Source: Macrostomum lignano (Eukaryota). From it: a stretch of 64,000 bases of DNA. The notes under the pieces are model-generated. The model did not search any database. It worked only from the letters and a program-made list of their open reading frames with translations, and was not told the origin of the DNA. Made by a program: the position numbers and the translations under genes. Shown here piece after piece: positions 35,255 to 64,000 of the stretch. The stretch spans positions 372,001-436,000 of the forward strand of contig NIVC01000023.1 of the NCBI GenBank assembly GCA_002269645.1, written 5' to 3'. Position 1 is the first letter of the stretch. Each line of letters starts with the position of its first letter.

Positions 35255-36295
35255 TCTGTAATGTACTGTTCCAGTCTGTAATGTACTGATCCAGTCTTTA
35301 ATGTGTACTGTTCCAGTCTGTAATGTACTGATCCAGTCTTTAATGTGTACTGTTCCAGTCTGTAATGTACTGATCCAATCTGTAATGTACTGATCCAGTC
35401 TGTAATGTACTGATCCGATCTGTAATGTGTACTGTTCCTGTCTGTAATGTCTACTGTTCCAGTCTGTAATGTGTACTGTTCCTGTCTGTAATGTACTGAT
35501 CCAGTCTTTAATGTGTACTGTTCCAGTCTGTAATGTACTGATCCAATCTGTAATGTACTGATCCAGTCTGTAATGTACTGATCCGATCTGTAATGTGTAC
35601 TGTTCCTGTCTGTTATGTCTACTGTTCCAGTCTGTAATGTGTACTGTTCCAGTCTGTAATGTACTGATCCAATCTGTAATGTACTGATCCAGTCTGTAAT
35701 GTACTGTTCCAGTCTGTAATGTGTACTGTTCCTGTCTGTAATGTCTACTGTTCCAGTCTGTAATGTGTACTGTTCCAGTCTGTAATGTACTGTTCCAGTC
35801 TGTAATGTGTACTATTTCAGTCTGTAATGTGCACTGTTCCAGTCTGTAATGTACTGTTTCAGTCTGTAATTTTTACTATTCCAGTCTGTAATGTGTACTG
35901 TTCCAGTCTGTAATGTGTACTGTTCCAGTCTGTAATGTTTACTGTTCCAGTCTGTAATGTGTACTGTTCCAGTCTGTAATGTGTACTGTTCCAGTCTGTA
36001 ATGTGTACTGTTCCAGTCTGTAATGTGTACTATTTCAGTCTGTAATGTGCACTGTTCCAGTCTGTAATGTACTGTTTCAGTCTGTAATTTGTACTATTCC
36101 AGTCTGTAATGTGTACTGTTTCAGTCTGTAATGTGTACTGTTCCAGTCTGTAATGTGTACTGTTCCAGTCTGTAATGTGTACTGTTCCAGTCTGTAATGT
36201 GTACTGTTCCAGTCTGTAATGTACTGTTCCAGTCTGTAATGTACTGATCCAATCTGTAATGTACTGATCCAGTCTGTAATGTACTGATCCAGCCT
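35255..36295. repeat. 20/22-bp minisatellite CTGTTCCAGTCTGTAATGT(GT)A
   Basis: About 48 copies downstream of the SYT12-like stop. Confidence 0.96.
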
Positions 36296-43500: not shown

Positions 43501-46500
43501 TCTTGGCTGCTTCACGAAGAAGAACAGGGTAGATACCATCAGGTCCAGGAGATTTGAAGGGTTTGAAGGTTCTGACCGCACGAGCGATTAAGTCTTCAGT
43601 GATAATGCCCGCCGCTAGGGTGGCTCCATCCATCGAATGGTTGGGTTCCGATCTAGCAGTGGGTACCCTCGGGAAGAATGTGCTGAGCATATGCTGAATC
43701 ACTTCTTCAGGGTCTTCTCTTCCGATCATGGCTAATTTGGATATTTTGTCCATTGTAAGGGCCTTGACAAGCCTAGAAGTAGGTCTGTCTTAATCCAACT
43801 CATTGCAGAATTGGCGCCATTTACATTCCTTGGCCTTGCGCACTTAGATTTGAAGTTGTGGGAGGCTTGTCGGAAAAGTTCCATGTCCTCCTGGTTTCCG
43901 GTCTTCATGGTACGCCGGTGAAGGCTTTTGGCCTTCCGTCTGAGTTTCCCCAGCTCCGGGTTCCACCACGGCGCCGAGGCACGGAGAGGGCTTTGTAGGC
44001 ACGGACAGGGCAGGCCGCTTCATAGGCTGCAATAATGCAACCTGTCAGCGTCTCAGCCACATAGTCCACATCCTCGCAGGTCTTAATCGGACGTAAGTCC
44101 GTGAGTTCCTGCAGGTGCAGATCAAGGGTAGCCTTATAGGCTGCCCAATCAGTGTTGCGGATGTTACGCCTCCAAGTGATCGAGGACTGGAGTTTAGTGT
44201 CCACGATTTTAAAGGCGATAAAGTAGTAGTCAGACAGGGAGGGCTCCTTAGACCAGACTTCACTTCTCAACTCTGTCAAAGAGTCTTGGGGTAGCGAGTG
44301 TGGCATCGAGGACCTCAGTCCATCTGCCATTGTTAAAGGTAGGAGTGCTACCGCGGTTGCAGAGCATGAGGTATGTGTTAGAGATAAGGGCCAGAAGCTC
44401 CTCCCCTCTAGTATTGGTGTCTTTGCTGCCCCAGTGCTTGTGGTGCGCGTTGAGGTCGCCCCCCTAAGCACAGCTCAGCGTTCTGGGACTCGCAGTACTG
44501 CGCAAGGCGCAGTAGACTTTCAGGTGCAGGGTCTCTGTCGCCTGAAATAATCGAAGCAACGAGACACGTCCGCGGAGAGAGATGATTAGATTGGATGACG
44601 CAGAGGTCTTCATCTGAGAGATCAGTTCTCAGCCAAGCCTGGAGATGGCTGGCAGCGAGGATAGCCGCTCTAGGGCGGCTGTTCCCCGGGCCACACACAT
44701 AAAAATCAGAGTAGCCAGAAGGAATGTTGGGCAACTTACCGTTGCGCATCCAGGGCTCCTGGATCAGAATGAGGCCTGGCCTTTACACCTCAGAAATCTT
44801 CATCAGATTTACTGACGCAATGCTTTAAATTTATTTGCAGACAGAGTGTCGCTCCTTTGGCAGCGTGGAGCTTAGTCAGCTGGCTAGAACCCCAGGCCAT
44901 CAAGGAGACTTGGACAGCAAATCGTCCTCGTCCCAGGCCGTTGGGGCTTGACTGGGAGATGGGAGTTGGTCGATGTCCATGGCATCCTGACCCCCACCAG
45001 CCCCCCAGCAGAGTCCTCGGGCTCCGATGACAGGATGGAGGAAGCTTCCTCATCTCATCTTTGCCTTCAGACCCCACCAGGGTGGCTGAGAGCTCGGATT
45101 CCGAAGACCCGGCCTCGTCCTCAACTCCTTCTCCGGCTGGCAGGTTCGGTTCCCGGGGCTTGGCCGGAGCCGTCACCGCGGTCGTCGAACTGCTGCTAGC
45201 AGAGGGGCGAGACGCAGCTCCGGCTTTGGGATCGGCTTGCGCCTTTCCTTGGGCCTTAGACTGCACCCCGCTCTTGCCGGAGATGCCGGGGTTGGCAGAA
45301 GCTTTCCCTTTGGCAGACTTTCCTCGGCGCATCTTGAGCTTGAGGGCACCCAGCTGGAAAGAGGATCCGTTAGGGTACCGACTCGCCCAAGCGTTGGAAA
45401 GGCCGAGGACGATTAATTTGCCCGTTTCCCCCCTGCGGACATTACGATGATACACCAGTCCACTAGCAGAGAGGTCGGGATTCAGGCGCAGTAGGACCCG
45501 GCGAAAAACGTCTGGTCCAGCTGCGGTGCTTTTTGCAGGGACAAAAACCACATAGGGTATTGTCTTTGGACGCTGGCCTTTGCGAAGAAAAAGGGCTCCG
45601 CCGTGGTCAACATCCAAGGAGACCGTTGGCAGCCGCTGGAGCAGCTGCTGAGCGTCCTCATCACTGCTAGGAGCGGTAAGAACGAATGTGCTTCGCAGCA
45701 CCATCCGCTCAATGCCGATGGAGATTCCCTCCTCGACAGTCAGCTCAATCAGATAGGAGTCAATAGCACCACACACTTTTTGAAGCTGATCAGTGGTCTA
45801 GTCCTGGTCGCGACCTTGAATGATCACTCCCGGGATTTTGGCCTTGGCCTTCGCCGCAAAGGTAGTTCCCGAAGAAACCTCCTTGTTGGCAGTGGCCATT
45901 TGTTGCGCCGTGGTTTCGGCCTCAGCAGCCGCAGCAGCATCTCCAGGGAGCGCCGCCGCCGAACTACCGGAGCTTCCACCGGCCGGCCCGTCTAGTTGCC
46001 TTGGGACGCCAGTCGCTTCAGCGTCCGTGGTGGACGCCGCCGCTTTGGTCCCCGCAGCTCCCTTCTTGGCCTGCCTTTTGGCGCGTCGCTTAGCGCGTTT
46101 GCGCTCGAGCCGAGCCCGCTGAGCTTTGTCGGATCTGCCAGATTTGGCCGGTCCTTTAGGCTCAGAGCCCGCGGTTCCCTTTGATCTACCAGCAGAGCTG
46201 GCAGGTCTTTGGGTGTTTTGGTTTTGGTAGCTCTGGTTGGATCTGGTTGGAAGGCCAGCCGGTCCTTCCTTTGCCACAGTTGAATCAGTCGGTTGGGATC
46301 TGCCAGCAGGGCCGGCCGGTCCTTCGGACTGAGGTTGGGGTTTAGAAGGGTCCCCGTCCCTAGAATTAGCTTGATTATCCATAGTCGGCTTGAAGGCCAT
46401 GATAAAGATTGGTGGGCTACCCTCGAAGGGGCGCGGTACCCACCCGGCCGCTCCACCTGACCGGGCAGTAGGCCGGCCCGACACCAGGAGAGGGACCGCT

Positions 46501-46955
46501 TGCGACCGGACAACTCCCCGGCCTTCCAGCCCATCGGCACGGTCGAACACCTTAGGCATTAGAGGGTGCGTTGAGCAGTACCACGGCCTGCGGACTGGCG
46601 AGCCAGACCCGCATACACAAGTTCGGCAAAGCCACTGGATGGGTCCCCAGCGCCGGAGCCCAGTCTGTCCGGCAGCCCTAGGGTCTGCCTTGAACACACG
46701 CGGGGACGAGTACCCTGGGTCGGCTTGCGAGACAGCGTGGGGGGGGGTCTGCGGCTGCCAGCGGCAAATAGAGGGTGCAGACCTCCCTCCAGCCTTTACC
46801 TGCTGAAGATAGGGGCAGGCGTGGAGCATCGCAGACCTTAGCCCATAGGCCTGGTCTGTCTCATACTTCACTGGCATGCTTAATATGCCCGTGCGAGCGA
46901 GGGCGAGGGCGAGGGAAACTGCTGACAAAGGGGGGCGCCTAACACCAAACTAGCG
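40585..46955 (-). mobile_element. Near full-length, inactivated non-LTR retrotransposon: ORF1 (basic, gag-like) - APE - RT - RNase H - CCHC (LOA/R1-like architecture)
   Basis: ORF1 pieces 45798-46928 and 44790-45776 (same frame, one TAG). APE: LQINLKH, LILIQEPW, GGDLNAHH.WGS. RT 42407-43753: KSPGPDG, FRPISLTS, QHAFRTGRST, GGPQG, YADD. RNase H: YTDGSK, VFQSEVLAI, HSDSQAAL, WVPRHVGIRGNELAD. Zinc knuckle CSFC..ETAEHFVSIC. Several frameshifts; exact ends and TSD not defined. Confidence 0.9.
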
Positions 46956-48278: not shown

Positions 48279-51200
48279 ATGGTGCTGGTTTGGTAAGCAT
48301 TTTATTACATTTTTGAGCCTACAGGCAGTACAGATCTCCATTGAGAACAGTTTCCCATTGAGTACAGTTTCCCATTGAGTACAGTTCCCCGTTGAGTACA
48401 GTTCCCCATTGAGTACAGTTCCCCATTGAGTACAGTTTCCCGTTGAGGACAGTTCCCCATTGAGTACAGTTCTCCATTGAGTACAGTTCCCCATTGAGTA
48501 CAGTTCCCCGTTGAGTACAGTTCCCCGTTGAGTACAGTTCCCCGTTGAGTACAGTTCCCCGTTGAGGACAGTTCCCCATTGAGTACAGTCCCCATTGAGT
48601 ACAGTCCCCATTGAGGACAGTTCCCCATTAATTACCGTTCCCTGTTGAGTACAGTCCCCATTGTGGACAGTTCCCCATTGAGTACATGCAGTTTTCCAGG
48701 GAGAACAGTTCCTACATGTAATTTCTGATTTGTGAGCTGACTATGGCGCATCGGGATCAAACTTTCTTACAGGTTCCTGCTGGTTCTAATCCAAACATCT
48801 GGAAATCTTGCCGTTAACAGTTGCCAAAATGGAGGTACATTCGATTATAGCACTTTCAGATGCTTCTGCACCACTGAGTTCTATGGGGAGAGTTGTGAGT
48901 CATCCTACATTGACAACGATCCGTGCTCGGATCCCAGCATCCCGGAGATTGCCGATTCAACGGGCTCTCATGGACCAGCGAGAACTCAGTCCTGCACAGA
49001 AACGGGTACTTGCTTTGACTTCTCCAAAATTTCAACCGGATGGTATAGGATTAACTCTCCGGTCGGGAATGCACTGACAAGCAAGTGTCCTGACACAACA
49101 AGCACCTGTGGAAGCTCCGCGCCATTCATCGTCACAAACATTGTCCAAGAACAGAACGCCAACAGGCAACTCTATTCTGCTAAACTGTCTAAGATAGTTA
49201 GGTCCGGGCCCAACTGTTACGATTCCAGTGGCGACAACTATCCGGTGAAAATCCTGGAATGTGGATCGTACAAAATTTACTACCTAAGACCGACAAGCTA
49301 CGCTGAGCATCACTACTGCATTGGAGACAGGAAAGTGTGCGCAACTGGGTTCGTTTCAGCAGATGGCAGCGGCTACGAGCCGTGTCACGATGCCACTTCC
49401 TGCTTGGCGACGTTGAAACCTAAAGCTGCTACGTCTCCGATTCTACGACAAGTCAGAATCAATTTAAACCAATACAATTACCACAGTTACTTCAACTGCT
49501 CGTTTCAAAACGTATTTCAAGCTCCGAGCAACTTCACGCTGGGACTTCGATACAGAGTAACTTACCGGCTGACATTTCACAATGGTACAAAAATCGATAT
49601 CCCAGACTGCACGGCTGCCGATTTGAACATTGCATCGAATTCAAATGAAACAACCACAGTGTCCTGCAGGCACGACAAATTTCTTAGACCGCATTCTAAC
49701 ATCTACGGTGGAACGCTGGAATGCGTGCTGCAAGCGAAGTGCAACTCGGCAACCTCGAATTACATTTCCCAAGAGCTTAGCTCCGTACCGCACCGATTTG
49801 AGTTCCTATACAACCTGGTTGATCCCGACACCAATGCAACCACGTCCGTGATAACGCCTTTCAAGCCCATTCAAATATGCATTAATGTTTCGAAAGTGCC
49901 GACAGCCAGTGTAGGAAACGAGGGCGGCATTAAGTTTCGAATTACAACGCGCCGAAAAGCTCTAATTTTGAAGGACAAAATCACTATTAAGGTCAACTCG
50001 TCGATAGGAAACGAGACAGCAACTCCTTGTTCGGTAGAGTTTCCTCCTATGTTTATCGGTGCAACAAGAGCTTGCACAACGCTGACACTGATGAACGAGG
50101 ACGACGATGGCTTGATTGTTGCCGGTCTCACCGAATCCCAGTGGACTTCTCAGATCGAAGTGAATGTCAGTTACTCTTCAATGGCATTAAAAGGAGTTTA
50201 CACTGGAAATCGATGGGTGAAAATTCAGTCGCGCAAGCTAACCATTGATCTGAGTCCGCTATACGGGGTCGAACGCAAGGACTATTTGCACGTTTATTAT
50301 GACCCCTATATCAAGCCGGCGAACTTAGATTCAGCATATGGATCTTTCATTTCCGGCGACCAATGCAGAGTACTGTCTTTGCTGCGACACAGTACTCTGC
50401 CATACGAAGTACAAGCGAAGGAGTGCGTCCAGAATTCGAGAAATTCATTCGCGTCGTTTGTCACTCAGTTGGCTTTAAGATACGAGAATTACGTAATTCA
50501 AACGTACAGCGTAGGTGGTACATTTGCTTATACAACAAGGAAAGCAGCAGCAACTAGTGTACTGCCGCTGACTGATGACGATGTTCCCTGGGGAGTAACG
50601 ATTGAAAAAGCCAAAACTGGAGTGCGGCTGAAGCTTGACCTGTATGGCACAATAATTTACACCTGGGGCTTTCGCACCGGATCTCGAGGCTGCGCACACA
50701 CCTTTATTCAGAGTCGAAAATCAATGCTTGAATTTGATGCTACGCGGTGCTCTTCTTCACGTGCTACAACGGCTGGGTTCGATGCACTGGATACCATGGT
50801 AATCCCTGGGTTCTACGATACTCCTAGCAGAGTGGAGGGTCTCATGTACAAACCTAATGCAGCATCGTGGACAGTATCTGACACCATTGCCTTGGAAAGC
50901 ACTAGAGATATGTTCTCAAACAACTTTGTACCAGATTCAGTTCCAGAGAGTCTTTTGAAGCCAGTTCAGACGCTAAATTTTTGCTCCTGCTACGACAGTG
51001 ACGAATACAAACCGTTAGACCTGGCTGGTAGGTGTGTTATCAAACAAAATAAAACGTTGACACGCTACTCAAGAAAAAAGCGGTCAGTTCCTCCTCTTGG
51101 TCCCATCCTGTCGCAAATAATCGCAGGAGCAGCCAGACAGTCAGCTCAGAGCAGCAGTACCGATACAGTTACAGCGGACAAGGCAACGCAGCACTGCAAA

Positions 51201-51686
51201 GACTACGTCCAATCCGTATTAGACAAAAGAGGCAAGATCGTCACCGAGTGTTCAAAGGCAACCGGTATCATTGGAACTATGGATTTTATATCTAAATTCA
51301 AGACTGTTTGCAGTCAATACGCTATCCAGCTAAATTCATTCAACTTGACCGAGTCTCTGTTCAACTCTTTCGCTGGCGAATGCGTCAGGAGTCTCAGCTA
51401 CAACGTGTCGATTGTGCTAAACAGCAAAGCCAGCAGCATCATCCAAGACCTGGAGGCTGAGATCTGTCCCAATGGCTGCTCGGGCAATGGAATCTGCCTC
51501 TCTGGAGCTTGCCAGTGTACCGGAGGTTATTCAGGAGATGACTGCCGCGAACTTACAGTCCAGACTGGCGAAACTGGTGGAAATAATCCTACGGACGGCG
51601 CCGGGGCCATCATTACATCATTAGCGGCTTTGATTGTAGCGCTATTCTTCGTAGCCACAAGTTGCAAAATAACTCCGATTTATTAA
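48279..51686 (+). CDS. ~975-aa secreted/membrane-anchored protein: signal - EGF - uromodulin D8C-like - degenerate VWD - furin site - EGF - hydrophobic tail (VWDE-like); exons 48279-48292 and 48773-51686
   Basis: Micro-exon ATGGTGCTGGTTTG|GTAAGC joins in phase 2 to the acceptor at 48772, giving MVLVWFLLVLIQTSG. Frame is open from 48774 into track ORF 49245-51686: EGF (CQNGG..CFCTTEFYGESC), D8C-like (DPC..GWYRI..CGSSAP..ILECGSYKIYYL..YC), VWD-like YDPY.., RYSRKKR, CPNGCSGNGICLSGACQCTGGYSGDDC, hydrophobic C-terminus. Confidence 0.8.
48330..48700. repeat. 17-bp minisatellite TTGAGTACAGTTCCCC(A/G)
   Basis: Fills the coding intron of the VWDE-like gene. Confidence 0.95.
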
Positions 51687-52857
51687 GATTGCTATATATT
51701 AACAAATCATATCAAAATTACTCTGCCAAAGGATTTTTATTGACAATTTTTTATATTCATATCTACTTACTCGTCGAAACTTTACTCTCGAATTTGTTCA
51801 TCTATATTTTTTTTATTTTTGTTCATAGCTGCAACAGCTAACTTTAACTACGAGCATGTTTTTTTCACTATATAAGTCTTTGTATATTTGTATCAGAGTT
51901 AAGTTTATTGAATAGTTCAATCGATGCTTAGTTCAAATTTTAGCTCACTCCGTTAATTTTCGTTTTATTTTTGGTTTCTATAGCTTAGCTGTTGTTACGC
52001 GTCAGAAGTTGCTTAAAATATGTATTCAGCATTCAAATTCAAATTCAAATTTTGGCTATTGCCATATTTTGTATCTGCTTTTGTAGATATTCCGACCTTA
52101 GTCTGATGTTCAAGAGCGACGCTAAAATTTATCCCTGTTTATAACAAAAGTTTATAACTACTCACGATTTTTAACCGAATTTTTAAATGCGGTTTGTTAC
52201 ATTAACAAAATTTACTGATTAAAAAATATACACATTGACGAGCTCGTAAAAAGGTTTTCAATTTAGCCTATTTTAAATCTTATTGGCCTTGTGTATTCTT
52301 GTGCAAACCCTTCTAACGATTTATAATTGTGACTTTAAATTACAGTAATAGAAAATATTTCAGACATAAATCTTTATTATAGTTCACCCAGCAAGCGAAT
52401 TTATTTGTTTTAACAAGATAATCTTTGTTCACGGATGTTTCTAAGCACAGACCGCTCCTGCTGCCGCTTTTGCATTTGCTGCCGGCGGCACCTTGCAAGT
52501 AGGGGAGCTGCAGGTTGTTGAAGTTGCCGCCTGCGGCATAGTTGCACACCATGTGGTAGGGGTAATTGCCGCACCTGGCCACCCCGCAACCAATTAAGGT
52601 GGTCTTGTCCCATACCATCTGAGTGTAATGACCGCACACTTTTCTACAGCTCTTACTATTGTAGTTGTAGTCTTTGTACTCGTCAAACCACAACTGGACG
52701 TAGCTGAAATCGAATTGAATGCTTATTTTTTATACAACCATAATCGTTGTTGACGTTACAGAGAGGCTATGAGGGAATTTTTTAACACTAAAAGCAAAGC
52801 CCTGAAGGCCAGCAATCCAACCTATATTATCTAACCTATAACCTATAACCTACTAAC

Positions 52858-53149
52858 CAGGAGCGTCGCTATGGATTTAATGTTGAGGGGGACAAAGCTA
52901 GAGTTCTACATGTGCATGTACATTATTAAAATTCAACATGTACATTATTTTCAGAATCGGTGTTGTCAGCGATCATTTTAGCGCCGCATGCACCAATTTA
53001 GCGCCGCAGGCGCTGTTTTGTCGCCCTGAAGCAAAATTATTGATTTCCAGGTCAACAAAAGTGGGGTAGGGGACAAAGCCTTAGAATATGTCCCCTACCC
53101 ATAACGTTTCTAGGGGGATCCTGTCCCCCCCCCGGTGGCGACGCCCCTG
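52858..53149. mobile_element. 292-bp hAT-like MITE
   Basis: TIR CAGG(A/G)GCGTCGC (11/12); 8-bp flanks CTACTAAC and CTACTAAA (7/8). Confidence 0.75.
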
Positions 53150-53569
53150 CTACTAAACCTATAGCCTATCTAAGTTATAAGATATTCAGCAGATGTTAAC
53201 TTTGATACCAAATCCCTTTAAGCCATAGCATAACCCTAGTTAACTCTCCCTTTGATGCTTGGCCCGTGGATTTATATGTATAATAAGGTTTAGGAATTAG
53301 GGTTTAGCGCAATGCAACAAAATATTTACCTTGTAAAGTCGTCACTTCTTCCGCCAGCCCAGTTCTGTCCGACCCAGTTGAATGGGGGCAACTTTCTGTC
53401 CGCCGATGACTCGTGACCAGCCCGGCACTTCTGCACCCATTTGTTGGCGCTGGCCATGAGCCTGTCGTCCCAGACCCTTTTTGATTAATTGGAAATGAAA
53501 ACAGCAACAGTTTAATAAACTTGGGGGTTGGCGAACCATATCTAGAGAAGTGGCATTTGTGTGCATCGG

Positions 53570-53950
53570 TAGGAGTGGCAACCCATCTAGAGGAGTGACA
53601 GCCCATCTAGAAGAGTGACAACCCATCTGGAAGAGTGACAACCCATCTAGGATCGTGACAACCCATCTAGGATCGTGACAACCCATCTAGAAGAGTGACA
53701 ACTCATCTAGAAGAGTGACAACCCATCTAGAAGGTCGACAACCTATCTAGGATCTTGACAACCCATCTAAAGGAGTGATAACCCATCTAGAAAAGTGACA
53801 AGCCATCTAAAAGAGTGAAAACTTATCTAAAAGAGTGGCAGCCCATTTAGAAGAGTGGCAACTCATCTATAACAGTGGCAACCCATTGAAAGAAGTCAAA
53901 ACCAATCTAGAGGTGTGCAATCCATCTTAATGAGAGACAACCCATCTAGA
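53570..53950. repeat. 20-bp minisatellite ACCCATCTAGAAGAGTGACA (degenerate)
   Basis: CAP intron; sibling of the 54295 and 57000 arrays. Confidence 0.9.
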
Positions 53951-54294
53951 AGAAGCAGCCCATAGGGAGGGTTGCCACTATTCTTTCCTGGCTTGCTTCA
54001 TTTGCAATATAAAGAAGTTCAGAAAATGCAGTATTGTTAATATGATTTTGTGCTGAAAGAACTAATTTTGCAAATGCATTTTGCTGTAGCAAAAATTACC
54101 AGCTCCGCCATGTCTGCCGCATGTCATGTTTGCGATCTCAGCTTATTGTGAGCGTCCACAATGGCTTGCTTTTGATTCGGTGTCAGCGACACCAAGCTGG
54201 CTTCGCAGCATGTCGTTGTCATGACAACCAGTAGGAGCAATGCGACTAAGTCTGTTAATCATGGTTAAGAACGATTGATGGAGAAAGCTTAGGA

Positions 54295-54750
54295 TTGGCA
54301 ACCCATCGGAAGGAGTGGAAACCCATCGGAAGGAGTGGAAACCCATCGGAAGGAGTGGAAACCCATCGGAAGGAGTGGAAACCCATCGGAAGGAGTGGAA
54401 ACCCATCGGAAGGAGTGGAAACCCATCGGAAGGAGTGGAAACCCATCGGAAGGAGTGGAAACCCATCGGAAGGAGTGGAAACCCATCGGAAGGAGTGGAA
54501 ACCCATCGGAAGGAGTGGAAACCCATCAGAAGGAGTGGCAACCCATCCAGAAGAGTGGCAACCCATCCAGAAGAGTGGCAACCCATCCAGAAGAGTGGCA
54601 ACCCATCCAGAAGAGTGGCAACCCATCCAGAAGAGTGGCAACCCATCCAGAAGAGTGGAAACCCATCGGAAGGAGTGACGACCCATCCAGAAGAGTGGCA
54701 GCCAATCCAGAAGAGTGACAACCCATCCAGAAGAGTGGCAGCCCAACCCA
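54295..54750. repeat. 20-bp minisatellite ACCCATCGGAAGGAGTGGAA switching to ACCCATCCAGAAGAGTGGCA
   Basis: Two homogeneous blocks, switch near 54530. Confidence 0.96.
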
Positions 54751-56158
54751 TCGAGAGAGTCACCACTCCTTCCCCAAAAAATATTATCTGGGCTGTGTGG
54801 ATCTGAGAATCGACGCTGAGGATTTGTCGTGCCCAAAATCGCATACCTAATCTTTAACTTATTAATTGCATGAATCAAAGCACAAACCTTTCATTCTCGT
54901 TGCCTTTTTACGTCCTGCGCAGGTTTTGCTGAGTTAAATCTGCCAAGAACGAGCAGTTAAATTGAGTAGTTAAATTGATTTTTAACCGCGCATTAATATA
55001 GCCTCAAGGACAACTCATTATTATTACTCATTGTCATTATTTTAAACGTTTTTCCAAGTGACAGACCAATTTAACATGAAAAATCAATTAATGCGTCGTT
55101 ACAGCAGCATGTGAGGCACAAAATAGTGTGATTAGGACTTTCTCTGACACTGTTAAGAGACCCTATCACTGTTTTTTTGTGGAAAATCGTGAAATTTCCT
55201 ATCTCCGTAGTGTATTTTTCCGGTGAAACCTGCCTTTAAAACTATTTCTGAACAAAAAACTTTATGAATATCGATAGAGCAATAAGAAAGGCACAACATA
55301 TCAAAAGATGAACACTGGATCTGTCTCCTATCAAATGCAATAACAATTTTTGTGCTGAAAAGAATTAAAACCTCCTATCTCTGTAGTGTATTTTTCGGCA
55401 AAAAGTTGCCTTCAAAACATTTACCATAGATTTCGAGTGTTGCGTCCTGTATGTATGTTACTTAAGTAGTCTTTGTATAGCCTGCGATAGTGAGACGAAA
55501 AAAACAAGCTGTGGCCGTTTGAAGTTATCTAACGATTGGACACCGTAAAATATTACTGGGGGTTGTAATTAATGTTTAATGATTGAATTATGAGCATATG
55601 ACAATAAAACGGGCGGTTTGGCTGTGAGATATGATGTACACTAAAATAAACGCGTACGCACATGATAAAAATTTGCAAGAAGTCATATTTGATGAGCACG
55701 AGATGAATGTACATAGCTCAATGTACGTAGCTTTTCCTGCTTTCTACTGTATACAAATCCACAAAGTCTCTACCTAACCTCTAACTCTGATATTTCCCCC
55801 GGATTAAAGCTACTAACACTAGAGTGTAATATCGGCAAAACTGCTGTCGCAAATTTTCATATTGTGTAGTGGATAGATGCATAAAAATATCTTTATTGCA
55901 TTCATTGTCTATGGTTTGAACTTGAACTTTTCAAAAAAAGTACTCTACAAAAATACTATATAATGTTTTATGGTCTACCGAGCCTCACTGTTTATTTTGT
56001 CTATGGTCAAAAGTAGGCGCACAAATATAGGCCTATAGTTACGGCTGCTTGAGTCTGTGTAGCCACTAAAAGAGAAAGCAGCCATCTAGAAGCGAATTCG
56101 GCAATTTGACTCAGTTTTTTTTGCACAAGGAGCAGCCCGCCTTAAGCCTTCGCCGGAA

Positions 56159-56590
56159 ATGTTCAATAACGCTTGCAGCGCTGACTGGCAACAGCAGCAG
56201 CAGCAACAGGATCTGGTCAGCGTGAACTGGAAAGACTGCATCCACCGTTGGAAGCGAAGCCGCGAAAAGTGGCGCTCCGAGGCCCTGCGCCTGCAGAAGC
56301 AGCTCTGCGACATGACTCGCAGCGCCAACCATTGGCGCCAACAGACCGGCATAGTGCAGGCCGAATTAGCAAAAGCGAGAGGCGCCCTAATCGGCTGGCG
56401 CACAGAGGCGCTGAGAACGCGCGAACTGGTGCGCCAGTGGAAAGCGGAAGCCATCAGATGGCGGGAGCAGGCGCGCGAATGGAAACGACGCTGCTGCGAG
56501 CTGATGGATCAGCGAGACGATCAACAGATTGCGCAACTATGCCACGACAGGTACAGCTGCGGCTACAGCCGCTGCGGCGACTACTGCTGA
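56159..56590 (+). CDS. Orphan 143-aa Trp-heptad coiled-coil protein with polyQ and Cys/Tyr-rich tail
   Basis: True ATG, GC-rich non-repetitive DNA typical of this window's exons, acceptor-like TTTTTTTGCACAAG ~30 nt upstream, strict heptad pattern in this frame only. No homolog recognised. Confidence 0.65.
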   Translation: MFNNACSADWQQQQQQQDLVSVNWKDCIHRWKRSREKWRSEALRLQKQLCDMTRSANHWRQQTGIVQAELAKARGALIGWRTEALRTRELVRQWKAEAIRWREQAREWKRRCCELMDQRDDQQIAQLCHDRYSCGYSRCGDYC

Positions 56591-56999
56591 TGATGACTGA
56601 CGCTGCCATCTACCATGTACACATTTTTCACCAAACTGTACAGCCGCAGCGCAATTTGTTGGCGATGTAAAACACACACAGACGACGCTCATTCAACTGT
56701 CAGAAACCCGAAGTGTCGAGACATTTTTTCAATCCAATTTTTTTCTTCCTTGTAAAAATTTTCGAAATGAAGTTGCTGAGTTTTTTTCATTTTTCTATTT
56801 TGCTCAGCTGCATTCACTGCAGAATGTCATTTTTCCTGTTCATAACAGCAGCAGGAAGCAAAATACACACGCGCCAACTCAATGGATTGGTCCATTTTTT
56901 TCTGTACGAACGATGAAGTTTGATAGCATTTGTAGCCGTATTGCTTAATCTTAAGGATTTACCATATGACAAAAAAGTGCAACTACCCGATTTGAGAAG

Positions 57000-57465
57000 T
57001 GGCAACCCATCAGGAGGAGTAAAAATCCATCGAAAGGAGCGATAACCCATCGGGAGGAGAGATAACCCATCGGGAGAAGTGACAACCCATCGGGAGGAAC
57101 GATAACCCATCGGGAGGAGCGATAACCCATCGGGAGAAGTGACAACCCATCGGGAGGAACGATAACCCATCGGGAGGAGCGATAACCCATCGGGAGGAGT
57201 GACAACCCATCGGGAGAAGTGACAACCCATCGGGATGAGTGACAACCCATCGGGAGGAGTGACAACCCATCGGGAGGAGTGACAACCCATCGGGAGGAGT
57301 GACAACCCATCGGGAGGAGTGACAACCCATCGGGAGGAGTGACAACCAATCGGGAGGAGTGACAACCCATCGGGAGGAGTGACAACCCATCGGGAGGAGT
57401 GACAACCCATCGGGAGGAGCGATAACCCATCGGGAGGAGTAACAACCCATCGGGAGGAGTGGCAA
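57000..57465. repeat. 20-bp minisatellite ACCCATCGGGAGGAGTGACA
   Basis: About 22 copies. Confidence 0.95.
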
Positions 57466-57808
57466 ATGAAGTTTTACTCCATCAGGAGTGTCAAAATAAT
57501 ATAGGAATTGGTATAGTCTCACTTTTTAATTTATGCAGTGCTGAAGGGTCAGAGGTATATAATTTATCAGTAAAATAAACTGAACCGCTTGTACATGTAG
57601 CTTGAGTTATAACATTTCACAAAGCGTGTATGATTTTTAGTAGTTTGTCATATTTCCATTTTAAAGAACAATTACACGCACGAGGAAGACAGCCGAGTGC
57701 AGACATCGTCAAGGGCGATTTCACAGTACTGCTCTTTCTTTGCTAGCGTATATTTAATTTGTCCGATTAAAGTAATCTCAATACGTCGTAAGTAAAGGTA
57801 GGCAGATA

Positions 57809-58471
57809 CAGGGGTCGGCAAACACCCGACCCGCTAAAATTTGAAATTTCATCATGCGAGTTGCAAACCGGCTTGCTCAAGGTTTGTGATTCTTCTCAGC
57901 GCTCTCTCTCTAATCTCCTATCTTCTCTTAAATCTCCTCTCCTCTCCTCTCCCCTCCTCTCCTCTCCTCTGCTCTGCTCTCGTCTCCTCTCCTTTCCTCT
58001 CCTCTGCTCTCCTCTCATCTCTTCTCCTCTCCTCTCCTCTCCTCTCCTCTCCTCTCCTCTCCTCTCCTCTCCTCTCCTCTCCTCTCCTCTCCTCTCCTCT
58101 CCTCTCCTCTCCTCTCCTCTCCTCTCCTCTCCTCTCCTCTCCTCTCCTCTCCTCTCCTCTCCTCTCCTCTCCTCTTCTCTCCTCTCCTCTCCTCTCCTCT
58201 CCTCTCCTCTCCTCTCCTCTCCTCTCCTCTCCTCTCATCTGCTCTCCTCTCCTCTCCTCTCCTCTCTTCTCCTCTCCTCTCCTCTCCTCTCCTCTCATCT
58301 GCTCTCCTCTCTTCTCCTCTCCTCTCCTCTGCTCTCCTCTCCTCTCCTCTCCTCTGCTCTCCTCTGCTCTTCCCCCTCAACCTTTCCTCTCTCCCCTCTT
58401 CTGACCCGCACTCATGCTGCATTAGATTCCCTATTTTGGCCCACGAGATATAAAAGGTTTACCGACCCCTG
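57809..58471. mobile_element. MITE with hAT/Charlie-type TIRs whose interior is mostly (CTCCT)n
   Basis: CAGGGGTCGG(C/T)AAAC TIR (14/15) at 57809-57823 and 58457-58471; 5-bp direct repeat AGATA on both flanks. Confidence 0.75.
57930..58390. repeat. (CTCCT)n microsatellite
   Basis: Source of the SSPLL/RGEER pseudo-ORFs. Confidence 0.97.
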
Positions 58472-58529
58472 AGATAGACGGATACAAGCACATTCAAGTT
58501 TTTCTAAATTTCAGATATGTTTGTCTCGA

Positions 58530-59859
58530 TCAGCCACGGACAAAAAAATCGCCGCTGCTGGCACTGCTGAGAGCGAGCGGGACTACGGCATACTCCAGCA
58601 GGTGGCACTGGCCCTGCTGCTGGCTGAAGATCACCGCCTGACAGGCGGCGCCTTGGAGGACGCACATGAACACGCACTCGCTTCGATTAGGGGCGCTGAG
58701 GGTGGAGAATTCTGGCGCATTTGGTCTGTCGATGCTGACCAAGGTTCGGTTTCCAAGGACAAACAAGTTCTCATCTGCAATACGGGAGGGGGGCGTTGTG
58801 TTGAATGACTTCTGTGCGTTTCTAACCATGGACCACAGGCTTAAGCCCTCAGCTGCATGTAGATGCATCCAAAACCAACCTCTTTGCAATATTAATACAT
58901 ACCCTTAATTACCCCAGCTAATGCTGGCACCCATTTTACAGCTGGGTGAACTGAAGCAATGCAGAGTTGAGTGTCTCGCTCAATGGCACAAAATTGTTCC
59001 GAGTGGGATCGGGAATCGAACCTCCGACCTTTCAGTCGTGAGTCCGACGCTCGAATCACTAGCCTACAACCTCTACCTACTCGAAAGTGCTTGAAAATAA
59101 TTGAAAAATAGTTGCAAGTCTGATTTCCAACTCGTCATATCATCGGAGCTCTGCCTGTACACTAAAGCTCAATCTCTTAGCCTTTAACTAGCTTCCTGTA
59201 ATCACCATGAACAACTTGTTTAGTTGTTTGTGCTTAGTACGCTTAGTACCTAGTACGCCTTGTTTAGTACGCTCTAGAGCGGTGAATGGGCTTTCACCAT
59301 AGACAAAATTGGTCATGAGAAAATCCGATTTCTAGAGAGTATACGACATGCTCAGTTCTAAGAAACTAATCCTAATCCTGCTGTTAGGATTATTCTCGGT
59401 AGCTACCCAGAAATAAATTCCTGTAAACTTACTGCCAGCATATGTCAATTTTAGCACTCGATTTCGGTAAGGACCACCACAGTTTTGAGTCCTGTTACCG
59501 GTGCAGGTGTCCCAGCATTCCCAGTCAGGAGCCGCACCCTGCGAGCCGTAGGAGTTGCCGCAGCTGCACCAGTTTTCGCCTTGAAGCGTCATAAACTTGA
59601 AGCCGCCAAGTGAGCAGATGGTGCCGCACAGCTCGTGAGTCATTTGCCAACTCGACACGAAAACGTAACTTACATCAGTACCGTCAGGCCGTATGGTGTA
59701 ACGGCCAACCCGTGTCAGGCCCAGGTTTTTCAGTTTGCATATATCTCTCACACCATTCGTGTAGTCAACAAAGCAGCCGAGATCCGTGGTCTGAAACTGC
59801 CGACAAAGAGTGACGCAGATCAGGCTGCTCAGGATCGGGAAAATTCTATGGAGCGCCAT
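58530..59859 (-). CDS. Secreted WSC + PAN/apple-domain protein (~249 aa); exons 59859-59433 and 58852-58530
   Basis: Signal MALHRIFPILSSLICVTLC; WSC LGCFVD..MTHELCGTIC..LQGENWCSCGN..ECWDTCTGNRTQNCGGPYRNRV; phase-1 GTAAGT..CAG intron; PAN-like SECVFMCVLQGAACQAVIFSQQQGQCHL. Confidence 0.8.
58905..59072 (-). mobile_element. tRNA-headed CORE-SINE in the WSC-PAN intron
   Basis: Minus strand: A-box-like TAGGCTAGTG, perfect B-box GGTTCGATTCC (59022-59012), then GTGCCATTGAGCGAGACACTCAACTCTGCATTGCTTCAGTTCACCCAGCTGTAAAATGGG resembling the MIR/CORE consensus. Confidence 0.75.
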
Positions 59860-60169
59860 CAAGGCCAAAGCTTGAATCAGATCAGAATTCGAGAAATTTG
59901 CAGAGCCCGTTCGATTCTTAATGGATTTTTTATATTGCATTTTAAATTGAAATTGTCTTTTCGCCTGTCGTTTTGGTCCACACGGCTGGGTGGATACTGA
60001 TTGAAATCCATTATCAATCGAGAAACCTTTTTGACTCAAAGCTGTCGATTTTGCAAAAACGAAAAAAGCATTTTTCAATTTTCGCAAACCTCACTGAGTT
60101 GATTTAGACGGCTATGGTGAAAAGGATTTTTCATTCGTATCTAGGAAATATGATTTATAAAGTAAGTGC

Positions 60170-60743
60170 TGTAACCACGGCCTTGGCGTCTGAGTGCCTC
60201 GTCAATTAGACGGCTGCCTTGCCCCCCTGGGCTCTTGTTCTCTCTAGTACACAAGATATGTGACTTGCGACCCTTGGGTCGAGTGCGGCTTCTCCTGCCT
60301 CCTAGCACTGTCCATCATCACTACTATTATTCTATCACTCCCCTTCATCTCCATGTAAATCCCTTTATCCTCCCTATTTATTGCATCTGTCTCTCCCCTC
60401 GCTGTACTAGCTGTCTCATCTCTTTGCTGCGCCCTTTTGCCTCTGTTACATGTGTTGTGCATCCTAATACTCGTAATGCTATATCTTTTTACTCGAAGAA
60501 ATATATTCAATACATTTAACAACGTTTTCTCGATAGCCCGCCGCAACAATATGCATGCCTAACTTTGCCTAATTCTCACGTATCATCAAATCCAATGCGC
60601 AACTCTGACCCCCTATGTCCCCAAGCTTTTCCCACCTGTTAAGTAATCCCCTATCATAAATCATTTTCGCCGCTGTGCCCCACCCCAATTTCTCATCCAA
60701 TCACAGCGAGACGTCATCAGGTTTTTTTGGTAACAGAGGTAGG
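60170..60743 (+). mobile_element. Possible LTR remnant followed by a tRNAiMet-like primer-binding site
   Basis: TGTAAC at 60170, CATCA at 60715-60719, then TGGTAACAGAGG (60728-60739), 11/12 to the tRNAiMet PBS TGGTAGCAGAGG. No second LTR or gag ORF seen. Confidence 0.3.
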
Positions 60744-62734
60744 AGCCCGTTTTGAGTCCTGAGCATCATATCGTTCTTTCTTCACTTTCCTTCAATCGGG
60801 ACCTGTACGAGCTACTCGTTTTACTGTTTCCGCCCCTTGTGCTGTTTAGTTTGTTTTCCTGCGAGACCGGACTCCATACCCGAACCGCGGTGATCACCCC
60901 TAAGACTAATTTAATTTCCTCCGAATACTTTCATTATTGCTCCTAGATCCTCAGGAGCTTCCCAATAGACATTCGCTAACTGTCCTTCTTCCTCTTCCCT
61001 ATCTGTTGCCCACCAGATCTGGCTGATGCCCACCCCATTCCGAGACTTCCTGGATCATCCAGCGGCCACCGTGTGACCATATCTGACGACTACTGCTCCC
61101 AAGCAGCCCTGCCCGTCAGCCGTGTCTGTTCAGTTATTCCCCCCCTTGCGCTGTCTTTGAGTATCCTTAGCCAGGTCGTCTCCACCCCCATTGCTCTCAC
61201 CATTTTCTAATATTCCTCACAGTCTGCTTGACCGGGAGTCCCGTACGTCTCATCGTTAGTTTTTTTACCGCGCGGGTGTACATGTACTCCTGCACAGGTG
61301 ACTGGTGGCGGCCACGCTTCTGACGTGTACCATCAAAAAACTATGGGGCCCGCTGTCCAAATTAGGTATCTTGTTGGCCCGCTCAACGCCGTCAGCTACC
61401 GCACCATCCAGACATGGACAAAGTCTAGGGGACGAGGCCTGTTGGCTGTACTTTTCAGCGCCAAAGCCCAGGGATTTGCAGGTATTCTCATGCAGCTCGG
61501 GTTACGTCAGCTACATGTAGTATAATGACAGTAGTGAATCATAATTATGATTCAGAGTTTAACATGTACCACATGCTGAATGTAATATTGAAAAGAATCC
61601 GACACCTACAGACAAAAGACATACATCACGACAAAGCAGTCAATGCTGATGAATGATGATATAATAAGGGCCTGTAGCCAAGCTTAGACCAGAACACTTA
61701 GCTACTCAAGGCAGCTTCCGGTTAGATGGTAGGACGAGTAAAAGTAAAAGAGAATCAACTTATCATGCTTGTTCAAGTTTAGAGAAAAGTTTCCTGACTT
61801 TGATCAATATTCTCAGATAAGCTTGAAATGAAATGAATTCACCCAGTTGTGCTTACGTTAGACTATCTACGCGGCTTATTGAAGCGTATCGCTTCCTTAT
61901 ATCGAAGTTGATTCTTAGAATGATAGTTAGCTACTCGAAAAATAGTTAGTAGTTAGTTTTTCGAGCGAAAAATCGTTTTTTAATGAAGTCTGTGTCGGTA
62001 ATGTATTAGATAGATAATTGTGTTTGTATTGTATACAACAGTATTATATACAATTGTATTATTTTTATCGTATGATTCGTATTTATTGGCCTATTATGTA
62101 GTAGTGCCATTTTGCTATAGGCCTAGTGGTTTACATTTCAATTAGGTTTATGACTGTGTACGTGTAAGTGTAACATGTAGCTGCAGGCTAGGCCTACTTT
62201 ATTTTAGGCCTACAAGTACAACTGTGTATAGCTAGCCTAGACTAGAGGGCATACAGCATATTATAGGCATAGGTCTTCTTTGAATGTTACTGTGTAAATT
62301 TAATTAATTGTGCCTTTCTTGCTGCCTGTCTTTAGGGCCTATTTTAAGTTTTCAAGGGCCTTGAGTGCTAGAGTGACAGCAGCTAGACTAGGTCAGGATT
62401 GTGACAGGTCAGGTCAGGTCAGGCCCTATATACTCAGCAACATTGAAAGACACTTGTTATTTGCACTATACCATATACTATTGTTATTTACATGGTAGGC
62501 CTAACTAAAATAAATATTAGTTTTATATACTGTGACATTATGTATGTGTGTGTACTTGTCTTATAGGCCCTACTATAGGTATAGCTATGGTCCAGTTATA
62601 TTTGAATAAATTGCATTTTCATTTGTTTCTTTTGAAACACAGTTTCTTTTGTACTTAAAATTATTAATAGGCCCTAGTATTAAGCTAATAAAAGTGCTAA
62701 GCTATAAACATATAAATCATGCCTAAGCTCTGGC

Positions 62735-63988
62735 TAGGGCTTATCTGGGTTTTTAAGGTTGGAAATCCAGTTGCCAGCTGGCCTATAGGGCTCAAAATAC
62801 AGTTGCCAATGGCTATTTTTGGTTGCCTATTGGCAATTAGCTAAATTCTTGAAGATAGATATTTCTTGCTTATGTTTTAAACAAGAGAATATCTAAGAGA
62901 GAATATCTAAGAGAATAGATATTTAAACAATTAAACTTAACTAAATTATGAATAATATTTGTTGCTAATAACAATATTAGTCTAAACTAATAATGGTTAA
63001 TGCTATTATATTGATTCATATGGCATTCTTAATTTAATTATAAAATCATTTTTTGAAGTCAGCAACTAGCATGGAAAAAATGAAGTTGGGCAATTCCATA
63101 TAATTATGGTCGTAACATGACAGGCTTTTTTTACTTATAAAATGAAATCTAATAATAGAATACACTAAACCAATATTTTAAATGAAAGATTTTTTTGTCA
63201 AGAATATTTTTATAGAGTTTCATGTAGATATCATCATTAATATAGATGCTATTAAACCTTGAATGGCACTTCTGGTCGTAACGACAGGATTTTTGACAGA
63301 TAGAAACTAAAAGGTAAAAGTCTTATAACATTTTTCATTTTTGATATTTTGCAATAAATTTTTTAAAATTCGACTAAGAACATCTTCAGAAATCATACTC
63401 TTTTTGTAGAATATATAAACTCAAAAAGGCAACAAAGATACAAAAGAAAAGGCAGCCTTATGGTCGTAACATTCTGGTCGTAACATATTTTGTTCTGTCA
63501 ATTCAGTAACTTAGAGGTACCAATATATTAAAAATATAATTGATTATTTGTTCATCAATACTTTTATCTGATGATGCAAGTACTATACTTTTATCTATAG
63601 TTTGTTTCAACCTTCCAAAGCTTTCTATTTGTTTTTAAAAGGTTCACAAACTTAATGATGTCTTTTGCTTAAAAAACTGTCCAAATTTTTACAAAAATTA
63701 CTTTTTGCCACTTGATAACATACTAATCTAACATTTTATCATTCATTTATTCTTAGATTGTAGATGTTACACATAAAAACATTTGGTAAAAAAATTGGCT
63801 AATCAGGCAGTGGCAAGCAAAAATATTGACTTTTTTCTATTTTCCAAATATGTCCATCTTATATGGAATGAGCCAGTTGCCAGATTGGCCTCTTATAGTC
63901 TTATACCAAAAATCTAATTGTCAATAAAATTTTCAAAAGGCCAAAAACCCCATATCGGCATATAGCCCAAAAACCCAGTCTAAACTCA
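62735..63988. mobile_element. Possible AT-rich non-autonomous DNA transposon
   Basis: Inverted CTGGGTTTTT / AAAAACCCAG near the ends, subterminal CCAGTTGCCAG at both ends, internal TGGTCGTAAC x4; no TSD found. Confidence 0.3.
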
Positions 63989-64000
63989 ATTTATTGGCTT

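What the first reader, a model, noticed from the sequence alone, without database searches (positions are those of the whole stretch)
56159..56590. Orphan protein with nine tryptophans in one heptad register (natural Trp-zipper coiled coil)
Seen: Trp at residues 10, 24, 31, 38, 59, 80, 94, 101 and 108, all 3 mod 7. The other positions in that register are mostly L/M/V/A; the +4 positions are mostly A/I/L/V/C; eight of nine Trp are followed by K/R or Q. The DNA is not a tandem repeat, so the periodicity looks selected at protein level. It ends in a Cys/Tyr/Gly tail (CHDRYSCGYSRCGDYC). Established: Trp is rare in natural coiled-coil cores, and engineered Trp-zippers based on E. coli Lpp form a five-helix bundle with an axial channel. 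Inference: a lineage-specific higher-order coiled coil, possibly structural or channel-like and cross-linked through the Cys tail.
Basis: partly seen in the sequence, partly recalled or inferred. Interest (0 to 1): 0.75.

Follow-up and report, generated by a model that had tools for sequence, protein, structure and literature searches.

The report
Flatworm-only tryptophan-core coiled-coil gene family
A small intronless gene of the flatworm Macrostomum lignano encodes one long alpha-helix with eight conserved tryptophans on a single heptad stripe; this is a real, selected, flatworm-restricted protein family with an unusual coiled-coil core, but its cellular job is still unknown.

Summary
The ORF at 56159-56590 (+) encodes 143 aa with Trp at residues 10, 24, 31, 38, 59, 80, 94, 101 and 108, all in one heptad register. 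The window is Macrostomum lignano (assembly Mlig_3_7).

The gene is real:
- Four copies in the assembly have identical CDS while their flanks differ by about 3-5%.
- There are three further paralogue groups. Between groups pN is about 0.26 and pS about 0.7 (saturated), giving dN/dS of about 0.17.
- The GenBank gene models of this assembly are built from RNA-seq.

No homologue appeared among 1.84 billion representative proteins outside this species.

Eight Trp (24-108) are invariant and keep their spacing in all paralogues. Trp10 is in register only by accident of a variable poly-Q. The Cys/Tyr/Gly tail occurs only in this paralogue.

AlphaFold2 predicts one unbroken helix (24-135). Trp sits at d, Ala/Leu/Ile at a, Lys/Arg at e and Glu/Gln at g. 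Periodicity is 3.50, not 3.60.

Best reading: a parallel homo-oligomeric coiled-coil rod with alternating Trp and small-residue core layers and a conserved basic N-terminal head. Oligomer number, partners and tissue are untested. A pentamer or channel is not supported. The local likeness to the cholinesterase WAT domain falls below family thresholds.

The parts
56159..56590 (+). Complete intronless CDS (143 codons plus TGA, followed by two more in-frame TGA) of the Trp-heptad protein, paralogue group A
   Evidence: identical CDS on four contigs of GCA_002269645.1; dN/dS 0.16-0.18 against groups B and C; GC3 0.75 against flanks at 0.42-0.48 GC
56094..56694 (+). Block with no variable site among the four genomic copies (about 65 nt upstream of the ATG to about 104 nt past the stop); probable mature transcript body (5' UTR, CDS, 3' UTR)
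   Evidence: 0 variable columns from -65 to +536 relative to the ATG, against about 3-5% variable columns in the adjoining flanks. The UTR limits are inferred.
56159..56227 (+). N-terminal residues 1-23, predicted disordered; holds conserved C6, W10 (groups A-C only) and a Q7 run (56189-56209) of variable length among paralogues
   Evidence: pLDDT below 50 for residues 1-19; alignments A1 and A2
56228..56563 (+). Residues 24-135: a single uninterrupted alpha-helix of about 112 residues carrying 15 heptads with Trp at 8 of the 15 d positions (W24, 31, 38, 59, 80, 94, 101, 108)
   Evidence: AF2 helix 24-135 with pLDDT above 90 over about residues 30-120; same result for paralogue B; register table and periodicity
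56225..56305 (+). Residues 23-49, NWKDCIHRWKRSREKWRsEAlrLQKQL: the most conserved segment of the family, invariant also at solvent-facing positions, strongly basic, with invariant Arg35 at a core 'a' position; candidate partner-binding head
   Evidence: invariant columns in A2. The binding role is inferred.
56423..56491 (+). Residues 89-111, ELVRQWKAEAIRWREQAREWKRR: second Trp triplet, with local likeness to the cholinesterase WAT (t-peptide) helix
   Evidence: Pfam AChE_tetra E = 0.24, 11.6 bits, cut-off 25; 11/23 identical ungapped to 1VZJ chain A; shuffles with Trp held fixed reach that score 2 times in 300
56492..56530 (+). Residues 112-124, conserved C-terminal box C-x-E/D-L-M/L-D/E-x-K/R-D-D-x-x-I, with invariant C112 at an 'a' position
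56540..56587 (+). Residues 128-143, the Cys/Tyr/Gly tail CHDRYSCGYSRCGDYC; specific to this paralogue, contains a 12-nt tandem duplication (56552-56575, YSCG/YSRC), predicted disordered at its end

Best explanation
This is a genuine, transcribed, protein-coding gene of Macrostomum lignano. It belongs to a small, old gene family seen only in this flatworm among the databases searched.

The product has no signal peptide or hydrophobic segment that I could see. It has a short disordered N-terminus and then one continuous helix of about 110 residues.

The helix is a canonical 3-4 heptad repeat with an unusual core:
- Trp at eight of fifteen d positions.
- Mostly Ala, Leu, Ile or Val at a.
- Lys/Arg at e, the residue right after each Trp.
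- Glu/Gln at g.

The most likely behaviour is self-association into a parallel, in-register homo-oligomeric coiled-coil rod of about 15-16 nm (about 110 residues at about 0.148 nm rise). Large Trp layers would alternate with small Ala layers. The neighbouring e-position Lys/Arg could cover the indoles and pair with g-position Glu of the next chain. Invariant Cys112 at an a position could bridge chains.

The nearly invariant basic N-terminal part of the helix (residues 23-49) is the likely site for binding something else, whether protein or nucleic acid.

Shown: coding reality, purifying selection, restricted distribution, conserved Trp register, helix prediction, heptad periodicity.
Inferred: oligomerisation, parallel orientation, the role of residues 23-49, intracellular location.
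Unknown: strand number, tissue, biological role.
For: Gene reality:
- Four genomic copies have identical CDS and near-UTRs, while flanks vary by about 3-5%.
- The group B copies differ only by two synonymous third-position changes.
- Between groups, pN is 0.25-0.28 against pS 0.69-0.77.
- The proteins are in GenBank, whose annotation for this assembly derives from RNA-seq transcript assemblies.

Restriction:
- A profile HMM against 1.84 billion representatives found only M. lignano paralogues plus one spurious coiled-coil protein.
- There is no Pfam or PDB sequence family.

Structure:
- AF2 predicts a single helix at 24-135 in A and 15-132 in B, with pLDDT mostly above 90 and no hairpin.
- Hydrophobicity power at period 3.50 is 7.4-10.9 against 0.4-1.6 at 3.60, with a 7/3 harmonic.
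- The d position is 87% hydrophobic with 8/8 Trp invariant. The a position is 73% hydrophobic. The e position is 65% basic and 0% acidic. The g position is E/Q-rich.
- Parallel g-e' pairs give 2-3 attractive and 0 repulsive contacts. Antiparallel e-e'/g-g' pairing is net repulsive at most offsets.
- Mean a/d volume is 152-160 A3, like an ordinary Leu/Ile core.
Against: - No oligomer was modelled or measured. AF2 on a monomer cannot show association.
- The charge-pair argument for parallel orientation is mild. Groups C and D have antiparallel offsets that are neutral.
- Trp-Trp d layers next to Ala-Ala a layers would be sterically uneven in a parallel dimer, so strand number is open.
- The net charge of +5 to +14 would oppose homo-association unless it is neutralised by a partner such as nucleic acid.
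- No expression site was found. The paralogue identifiers were absent from all held supplementary tables.
- Some copies are damaged: a premature stop in two group C copies and a frame shift in D. Not every copy is needed.
Confidence: 0.6

Rival explanations
1. WAT-like clamp. Several parallel helices form a left-handed superhelix whose Trp stripe lines a central groove and wraps around a proline-rich (polyproline II) segment of a partner protein. This is how the tryptophan amphiphilic tetramerisation domain of acetyl- and butyrylcholinesterase wraps around the PRAD of ColQ or PRiMA.
For: - The only known-family hint in Pfam is AChE_tetra.
- Residues 89-111 match the 1VZJ WAT peptide at 11/23 positions without gaps (E..RQWKAE..RW......WK). 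That is more than the Trp spacing alone explains: 2 of 300 shuffles with Trp fixed reach it for A, and 5 of 300 for B.
- WAT is described as parallel helices with equally spaced Trp around a PPII helix, with a nearby Cys (PMC1285061).
- Here too Trp is followed by K/R and has a hydrophobic residue at +4.
Against: - The score of 11.6 bits is far below the Pfam cut-off of 25, with E = 0.24.
- For paralogue C the extra similarity vanishes, with 30 of 300 shuffles reaching it.
- The +4 positions are Ala rather than the Phe/Met/Tyr of WAT.
- The protein is free-standing with no visible signal peptide, whereas WAT is the C-terminal tail of a secreted enzyme.
- The comparison was chosen after seeing the Trp pattern.
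- No proline-rich partner is known.
Confidence: 0.12
2. One reading: a natural Trp-zipper that forms a five-stranded (or larger) bundle with an axial channel, cross-linked by its Cys-rich tail.
For: - Eight conserved Trp lie in one core register.
- An engineered Trp-zipper is used as a pentamerisation domain (PMC4619341).
- Extra hydrophobic residues at b positions (L43, I78, L85, I99) widen the apolar face.
Against: - Trp occupies only one of the two core positions and the other is mostly Ala, so the average core volume equals that of a Leu/Ile zipper.
- The e positions are conserved K/R rather than the apolar e/g residues typical of barrels.
- The Cys/Tyr/Gly tail is absent from groups B, C and D and is partly a 12-nt duplication.
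- No signal peptide or membrane segment suggests a pore.
Confidence: 0.08
3. A basic coiled-coil nucleic-acid binder, bZIP-like in logic. The coiled coil pairs the chains and the invariant basic N-terminal part of the same helix (HRWKRSREKWR, also a possible nuclear localisation signal) grips DNA or RNA, with Trp stacking on bases.
For: - Net charge is +5 to +14.
- The most conserved segment is basic and sits at the N-terminal end of the helix, invariant even at exposed positions.
- Every core Trp is followed by K/R.
- There is no secretion signal.
Against: - No bZIP, HLH or other nucleic-acid-binding Pfam family appears even at E <= 10.
- The bZIP signature N-x2-AA-x2-(C/S)R is absent by eye.
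- Basic residues are spread along the whole helix at e and c positions rather than confined to a head.
Confidence: 0.12
4. A surface-active Trp/Arg amphipathic helix that lies on membranes as a monomer, with palmitoylation at the conserved N-terminal Cys6, rather than forming a coiled coil.
For: - The Trp plus Lys/Arg composition is typical of interfacial membrane binders.
- Cys6 is conserved in a disordered N-terminus.
Against: - The exact 3.50 periodicity is held over 12 heptads, with almost no power at 3.60. On a straight helix the stripe would drift by about 240 degrees.
- g, c and f positions are highly charged, and the helix is 110 residues long.
Confidence: 0.05
5. Not a functional gene: a chance ORF or decaying pseudogene in repeat-rich DNA.
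For: - The gene lies between minisatellites, with no other called gene within 10 kb.
- Two family copies carry a premature stop and one a frame shift.
Against: - dN/dS is about 0.17 with saturated dS.
- The CDS is identical in four copies with diverged flanks.
- Only synonymous differences separate the B copies.
- The gene models are RNA-seq-based.
Confidence: 0.03

Closest known systems
Cholinesterase t-peptide / WAT domain (Pfam PF08674 AChE_tetra; PDB 1VZJ)
   Same: An alpha-helix with Trp every seven residues, Trp often followed by Lys, a hydrophobic residue at +4 and a nearby Cys. Residues 89-111 share RQWKAE..RW......WK with it. WAT helices are parallel and supercoiled (PMC1285061).
   Different: WAT is about 40 residues with three Trp at seven-residue spacing (1VZJ chain), is appended to a secreted enzyme, has aromatic residues at +4, and needs a polyproline partner. 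Here there are 15 heptads with 8 Trp, Ala at +4, and a free-standing protein with no visible signal peptide. The score is below the family threshold.
Engineered Trp-zipper pentamer (from E. coli Lpp-56; used as a pentamerisation module in peptide nanoparticles)
   Same: Trp in heptad core positions of a parallel coiled coil (PMC4619341; the rest from my own knowledge of Liu et al. 2004).
   Different: As I recall it (not checked here), the engineered protein has Trp at both a and d. Here Trp is at d only, with small residues at a, so the steric drive to five strands is missing.
Phage T7 tail-fibre gp17 coiled-coil shaft (PDB 7BOZ and others)
   Same: Best profile hit among solved structures. 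It has natural heptads of the form aromatic-(R/K)-x-E-(A/T)-x-x (F/W at 171, 178, 185, 199, 206, 213), the same heptad grammar as WRxEAxR here.
   Different: E = 0.47, which is not significant. The aromatics are mostly Phe, not Trp. It is part of a large fibre protein that, from my own knowledge, is trimeric. No homology is implied.
Canonical leucine zippers / bZIP
   Same: A continuous helix with a 3-4 heptad, g = acidic and e = basic pairs, and a basic segment at the N-terminal end.
   Different: Trp replaces Leu at d. There is no bZIP basic-region signature and no Pfam hit. The helix is about twice as long.

Membership tests
Heptad coiled coil (structural class) | Continuous alpha-helix | tested here: met
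   AF2 predicts helix 24-135 in A and 15-132 in B, with pLDDT mostly above 90
Heptad coiled coil (structural class) | Hydrophobic periodicity of 7/2 = 3.50 rather than 3.6, with apolar a and d positions | tested here: met
   Power at 3.50 is 7.4-10.9 against 0.4-1.6 at 3.60; d is 87% and a is 73% hydrophobic in four paralogues
Heptad coiled coil (structural class) | Two or more helices actually wound around each other | not testable with these tools
   Only single-chain prediction was available; needs AlphaFold-Multimer, SEC-MALS or a structure
AChE_tetra / WAT domain (PF08674) | Score at or above the Pfam gathering threshold (25 bits) | tested here: not met
   11.6 bits, E = 0.24
AChE_tetra / WAT domain (PF08674) | C-terminal extension of a cholinesterase catalytic domain | tested here: not met
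   A 143-aa free-standing protein with no carboxylesterase domain
AChE_tetra / WAT domain (PF08674) | [quoted passage not shown] | tested here: inconclusive
   The equally spaced Trp are present. The +4 positions are Ala/Leu/Ile, not aromatic. The terminal Cys residues are not conserved among paralogues
AChE_tetra / WAT domain (PF08674) | Assembly of four helices around a proline-rich attachment domain | not testable with these tools
   No partner known; needs binding assays
Engineered Trp-zipper pentamer type | Trp at both a and d core positions | tested here: not met
   Trp at d only. The a positions are I, R, A, L, A, T, L, L, A, V, A, A, C, R, Q. That the engineered protein has Trp at both positions is recalled from memory, not checked here.
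bZIP transcription factors | Match to the bZIP_1 or bZIP_2 profiles / basic-region signature | tested here: not met
   No such family listed even at E <= 10
Phage T7 gp17-like fibre shaft | Significant sequence similarity | tested here: not met
   Profile against PDB gives E = 0.47
ER/K single alpha-helix (SAH) domain | Charged helix without a hydrophobic seam | tested here: not met
   A conserved apolar a/d seam is present

The most novel reading that the evidence does not exclude
An independently evolved, 12-heptad-long natural Trp-lined superhelix. It either forms an assembly of four or more strands, or uses its Trp stripe as the cholinesterase WAT domain does, to clamp a proline-rich (PPII) partner. 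That would make it the longest natural aromatic-core coiled coil and a new protein-protein docking module, possibly in flatworm reproductive or structural tissue.
Probability: 0.15. Interest if true: 0.75.

Novelty: new variant of a known kind. Interest (0 to 1): 0.45.

Why it matters
Trp is, to my knowledge, the rarest residue in natural coiled-coil cores. Trp-rich cores are known mainly from engineering and from the short cholinesterase WAT peptide. This family offers something different. Evolution has held eight Trp in one core register over 12 heptads through duplications old enough to saturate synonymous sites.

That gives structural biologists a natural test case for how alternating Trp and Ala layers pack and which oligomer they specify. 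It also supplies a built-in fluorescence reporter. For flatworm biology it is one more taxon-restricted gene family. In M. lignano such non-conserved genes make up about 48% of germline-enriched genes (PMC5816591), but no tissue assignment could be made here.

Tried and rejected
- Pfam, PDB sequence and PDB profile searches gave nothing significant.
- Foldseek of the AF2 model against PDB gave zero matches, as expected for a lone helix.
- The word-indexed search of 5.8 billion proteins and the full HMM search of 1.84 billion representatives found only M. lignano paralogues. One additional 1240-aa hit is a generic repetitive coiled coil and was rejected.
- An intramolecular helical hairpin (the Trp triplets are roughly symmetric about residue 66) was rejected, because AF2 gives an unbroken helix in two paralogues.
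- Internal duplication of the protein: hhalign of the two halves gave probability 4%, and self-comparison showed no shift signal beyond the heptad.
- A mobile-element cargo flanked by shared repeats was rejected. The minisatellites around each paralogue have unrelated units and are ubiquitous in this genome.
- A frame-shift origin for the Cys/Tyr/Gly tail: other frames of the 3' end do not align better to the paralogue tails.
- No conserved upstream motif among paralogues was seen by eye.
- No Rfam family lies in 50000-64000.
- Expression look-up: the identifiers Mlig013763, Mlig005078 and Mlig026474 occur nowhere in searchable full texts or in the held supplements of five M. lignano papers. 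One large table was truncated in storage.

Full report
**1. What is in the sequence**

The ORF at window 56159-56590 (+) encodes the 143-aa protein MFNNACSADWQQQQQQQDLVSVNWKDC...RCGDYC. Trp falls at 10, 24, 31, 38, 59, 80, 94, 101 and 108, all 3 mod 7. The ORF is 60% GC with GC3 at 0.75, inside flanks of 42-48% GC.

TRF reports no tandem array within the ORF. The only direct repeat is a 12-nt duplication in the tail (56552-56575, coding YSCG/YSRC), with a third copy in the 3' flank. So the periodicity is not a DNA repeat.

For the eight Trp inside the helix, the chance that all share one register is 1.6e-7.

**2. Source and gene reality**

The exact protein is encoded on four contigs of GCA_002269645.1, the Macrostomum lignano Mlig_3_7 assembly. 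The window is NIVC01000023.1.

- The four copies have identical CDS. No site varies from -65 to +536 relative to the ATG, while adjoining flanks vary at about 3-5% of columns.
- The gene calls are intronless. No other gene is called within 10 kb in any copy.
- The GenBank annotation of this assembly is derived from RNA-seq-based transcript assemblies, with novel transcripts required to reach RPKM >= 0.5 (PMC5730564). The protein is in NCBI and UniRef. That is indirect evidence of transcription.

**3. Relatives**

Three further paralogue groups exist in the same genome.

| Group | Protein | Length | Copies | State |
|---|---|---|---|---|
| B | P0002 | 136 aa | 3 | Copies differ only by two synonymous third-position changes |
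| C | P0004 | 150 aa | 2 intact, 2 truncated | P0003 (118 aa) is the same gene with a premature stop at codon 119 |
| D | L012 5001-5458 | two pieces | 1 | Split by a 1-nt frame shift after the fourth in-register Trp |

Between groups, nucleotide identity is 62-66%. pS is 0.69-0.77 (saturated) and pN is 0.25-0.28, giving dN/dS of 0.16-0.18. The frame is therefore under purifying selection and the duplications are old.

A profile HMM search of 1.84 billion representative proteins found nothing else except one generic repetitive coiled coil. Pfam and PDB give no significant match.

**4. What is conserved**

In the four-group alignment, the eight Trp from 24 to 108 are invariant and keep their spacing. 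That is 8/8, against 36/97 other helix positions (Fisher p = 6e-4).

W10 is conserved in groups A-C, but its distance to the next Trp is 14, 5 and 19 residues. It is missing in D. Its register in the window protein is therefore accidental, caused by the variable poly-Q.

The best conserved stretch is residues 23-49 (NWKDCIHRWKRSREKWR.EA..LQKQL), which is invariant even at exposed heptad positions. A second conserved box is C112-x-E/D-L-x-x-x-x-D-D-x-x-I124. The Cys/Tyr/Gly tail is unique to the window paralogue.

**5. Structure**

AlphaFold2 with the paralogue alignment predicts a disordered N-terminus and one uninterrupted helix. This runs 24-135 in A and 15-132 in B, with pLDDT mostly above 90. 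There is no hairpin.

Register analysis:
- Trp is at d (8 of 15 d positions; the others are L, M, V, A, T, L, Q).
- The a position is 73% hydrophobic, mostly Ala, with invariant Arg35 and Cys112.
- The e position is 65% Lys/Arg and never acidic.
- The g position is rich in Glu/Gln.
- Hydrophobicity power at period 3.50 is 5-25 times that at 3.60, with the 7/3 harmonic present. This is the signature of a supercoiled helix, not a straight amphipathic one.

Parallel in-register g-e' pairs give 2-3 attractive and no repulsive contacts. Antiparallel e-e'/g-g' pairing is repulsive at most offsets. Mean a/d side-chain volume is 152-160 A3, close to a Leu/Ile core.

**6. Interpretation**

The best-supported model is a parallel homo-oligomeric coiled-coil rod. 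Trp layers alternate with small-residue layers and are flanked by Lys/Arg. A conserved basic N-terminal head probably binds a partner. Oligomer number, partner and tissue are not established.

The Cys tail is not a family feature.

**7. Closest known things**

- The only Pfam hint is the cholinesterase WAT domain (E = 0.24, 11.6 bits, cut-off 25). Residues 89-111 match the 1VZJ WAT peptide at 11/23 positions. Shuffles with Trp fixed reach that score 2 in 300 times for A, 5 in 300 for B and 30 in 300 for C. WAT helices are parallel and wrap a polyproline II helix (PMC1285061). This is a mechanistic lead, not membership.
- The best PDB profile hit, also insignificant (E = 0.47), is the aromatic-heptad shaft of phage T7 gp17, with the same aromatic-(R/K)-x-E-A heptad grammar.

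**8. What could not be done**

No multimer modelling was possible. There was no access to RNA-seq or to other Macrostomum genomes or transcriptomes. Identifiers of the paralogues were not found in the held supplementary tables.

As a prior only, about 48% of germline-enriched M. lignano genes are non-conserved (PMC5816591).

**9. Verdict**

The feature is real and selected, and is a new, taxon-restricted variant of the coiled-coil theme. Interest is moderate: structurally unusual, function unknown.

Noticed in passing
window 53573-53953, 54291-54745 and 56994-57465; also 57933-58370: Arrays of one 20-bp minisatellite family (units containing ACCCATC) lie on both sides of the gene and are open in several reading frames on both strands, which produces long spurious ORFs. 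A (TCTCC)n microsatellite of about 88 units follows. The flanks of the other paralogues carry unrelated minisatellites.
   Followed up: partly
window 1-52000: At least 17 further minisatellite or microsatellite arrays, for example 11368-12312 (18 bp), 17024-17912 (24 bp), 23157-24282 (CT-rich 9 bp, explaining the extreme GC and AT skew there), 27884-28968 ((CATC)n) and 35250-36297 (22 bp). This fits a very repeat-rich genome.
   Followed up: no
window 6336-7769 (+) and 41788-46928 (-): ORFs with reverse-transcriptase domains (RVT_1, E = 1e-25 to 1e-28). These are probably retrotransposon copies. The neighbouring long ORFs at 43905-46928 have no Pfam hit.
   Followed up: partly
window 18003-18596 (+), 21950-22774 (+), 49245-51686 (+), 59332-60087 (-): Long uninterrupted ORFs with RING-finger, Ras-family GTPase, EGF (teneurin/tenascin type; 813-aa ORF) and WSC domains. 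These are likely exons or intronless genes near the Trp-heptad gene.
   Followed up: partly
L008 and L009, 10355-10357; compare L010 and L011, 10001-10453: Two of the four group C copies carry a premature stop at codon 119 that removes the conserved C-terminal box. The downstream sequence is otherwise intact apart from one His/Asn difference.
   Followed up: yes
L012 5001-5458 (NIVC01000342.1): A fourth paralogue (group D) is split by a 1-nt frame shift between the 4th and 5th in-register Trp, with 20 nt where the other paralogues have 21. This is either a pseudogene or a long-read assembly indel. It has a different N-terminus and no W10.
   Followed up: partly
window 56552-56575 and 56639-56650: A 12-nt unit (TACAGCYGCNGC) is duplicated in tandem inside the Cys/Tyr/Gly tail and occurs once more in the 3' UTR. 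The stop is a triple TGA.
   Followed up: partly
L005 3701-5510: A hAT-family transposase gene (Dimer_Tnp_hAT, ZBED1-like) lies about 4.5 kb upstream of one group B copy only. It is an insertion that distinguishes that copy from the other two.
   Followed up: no
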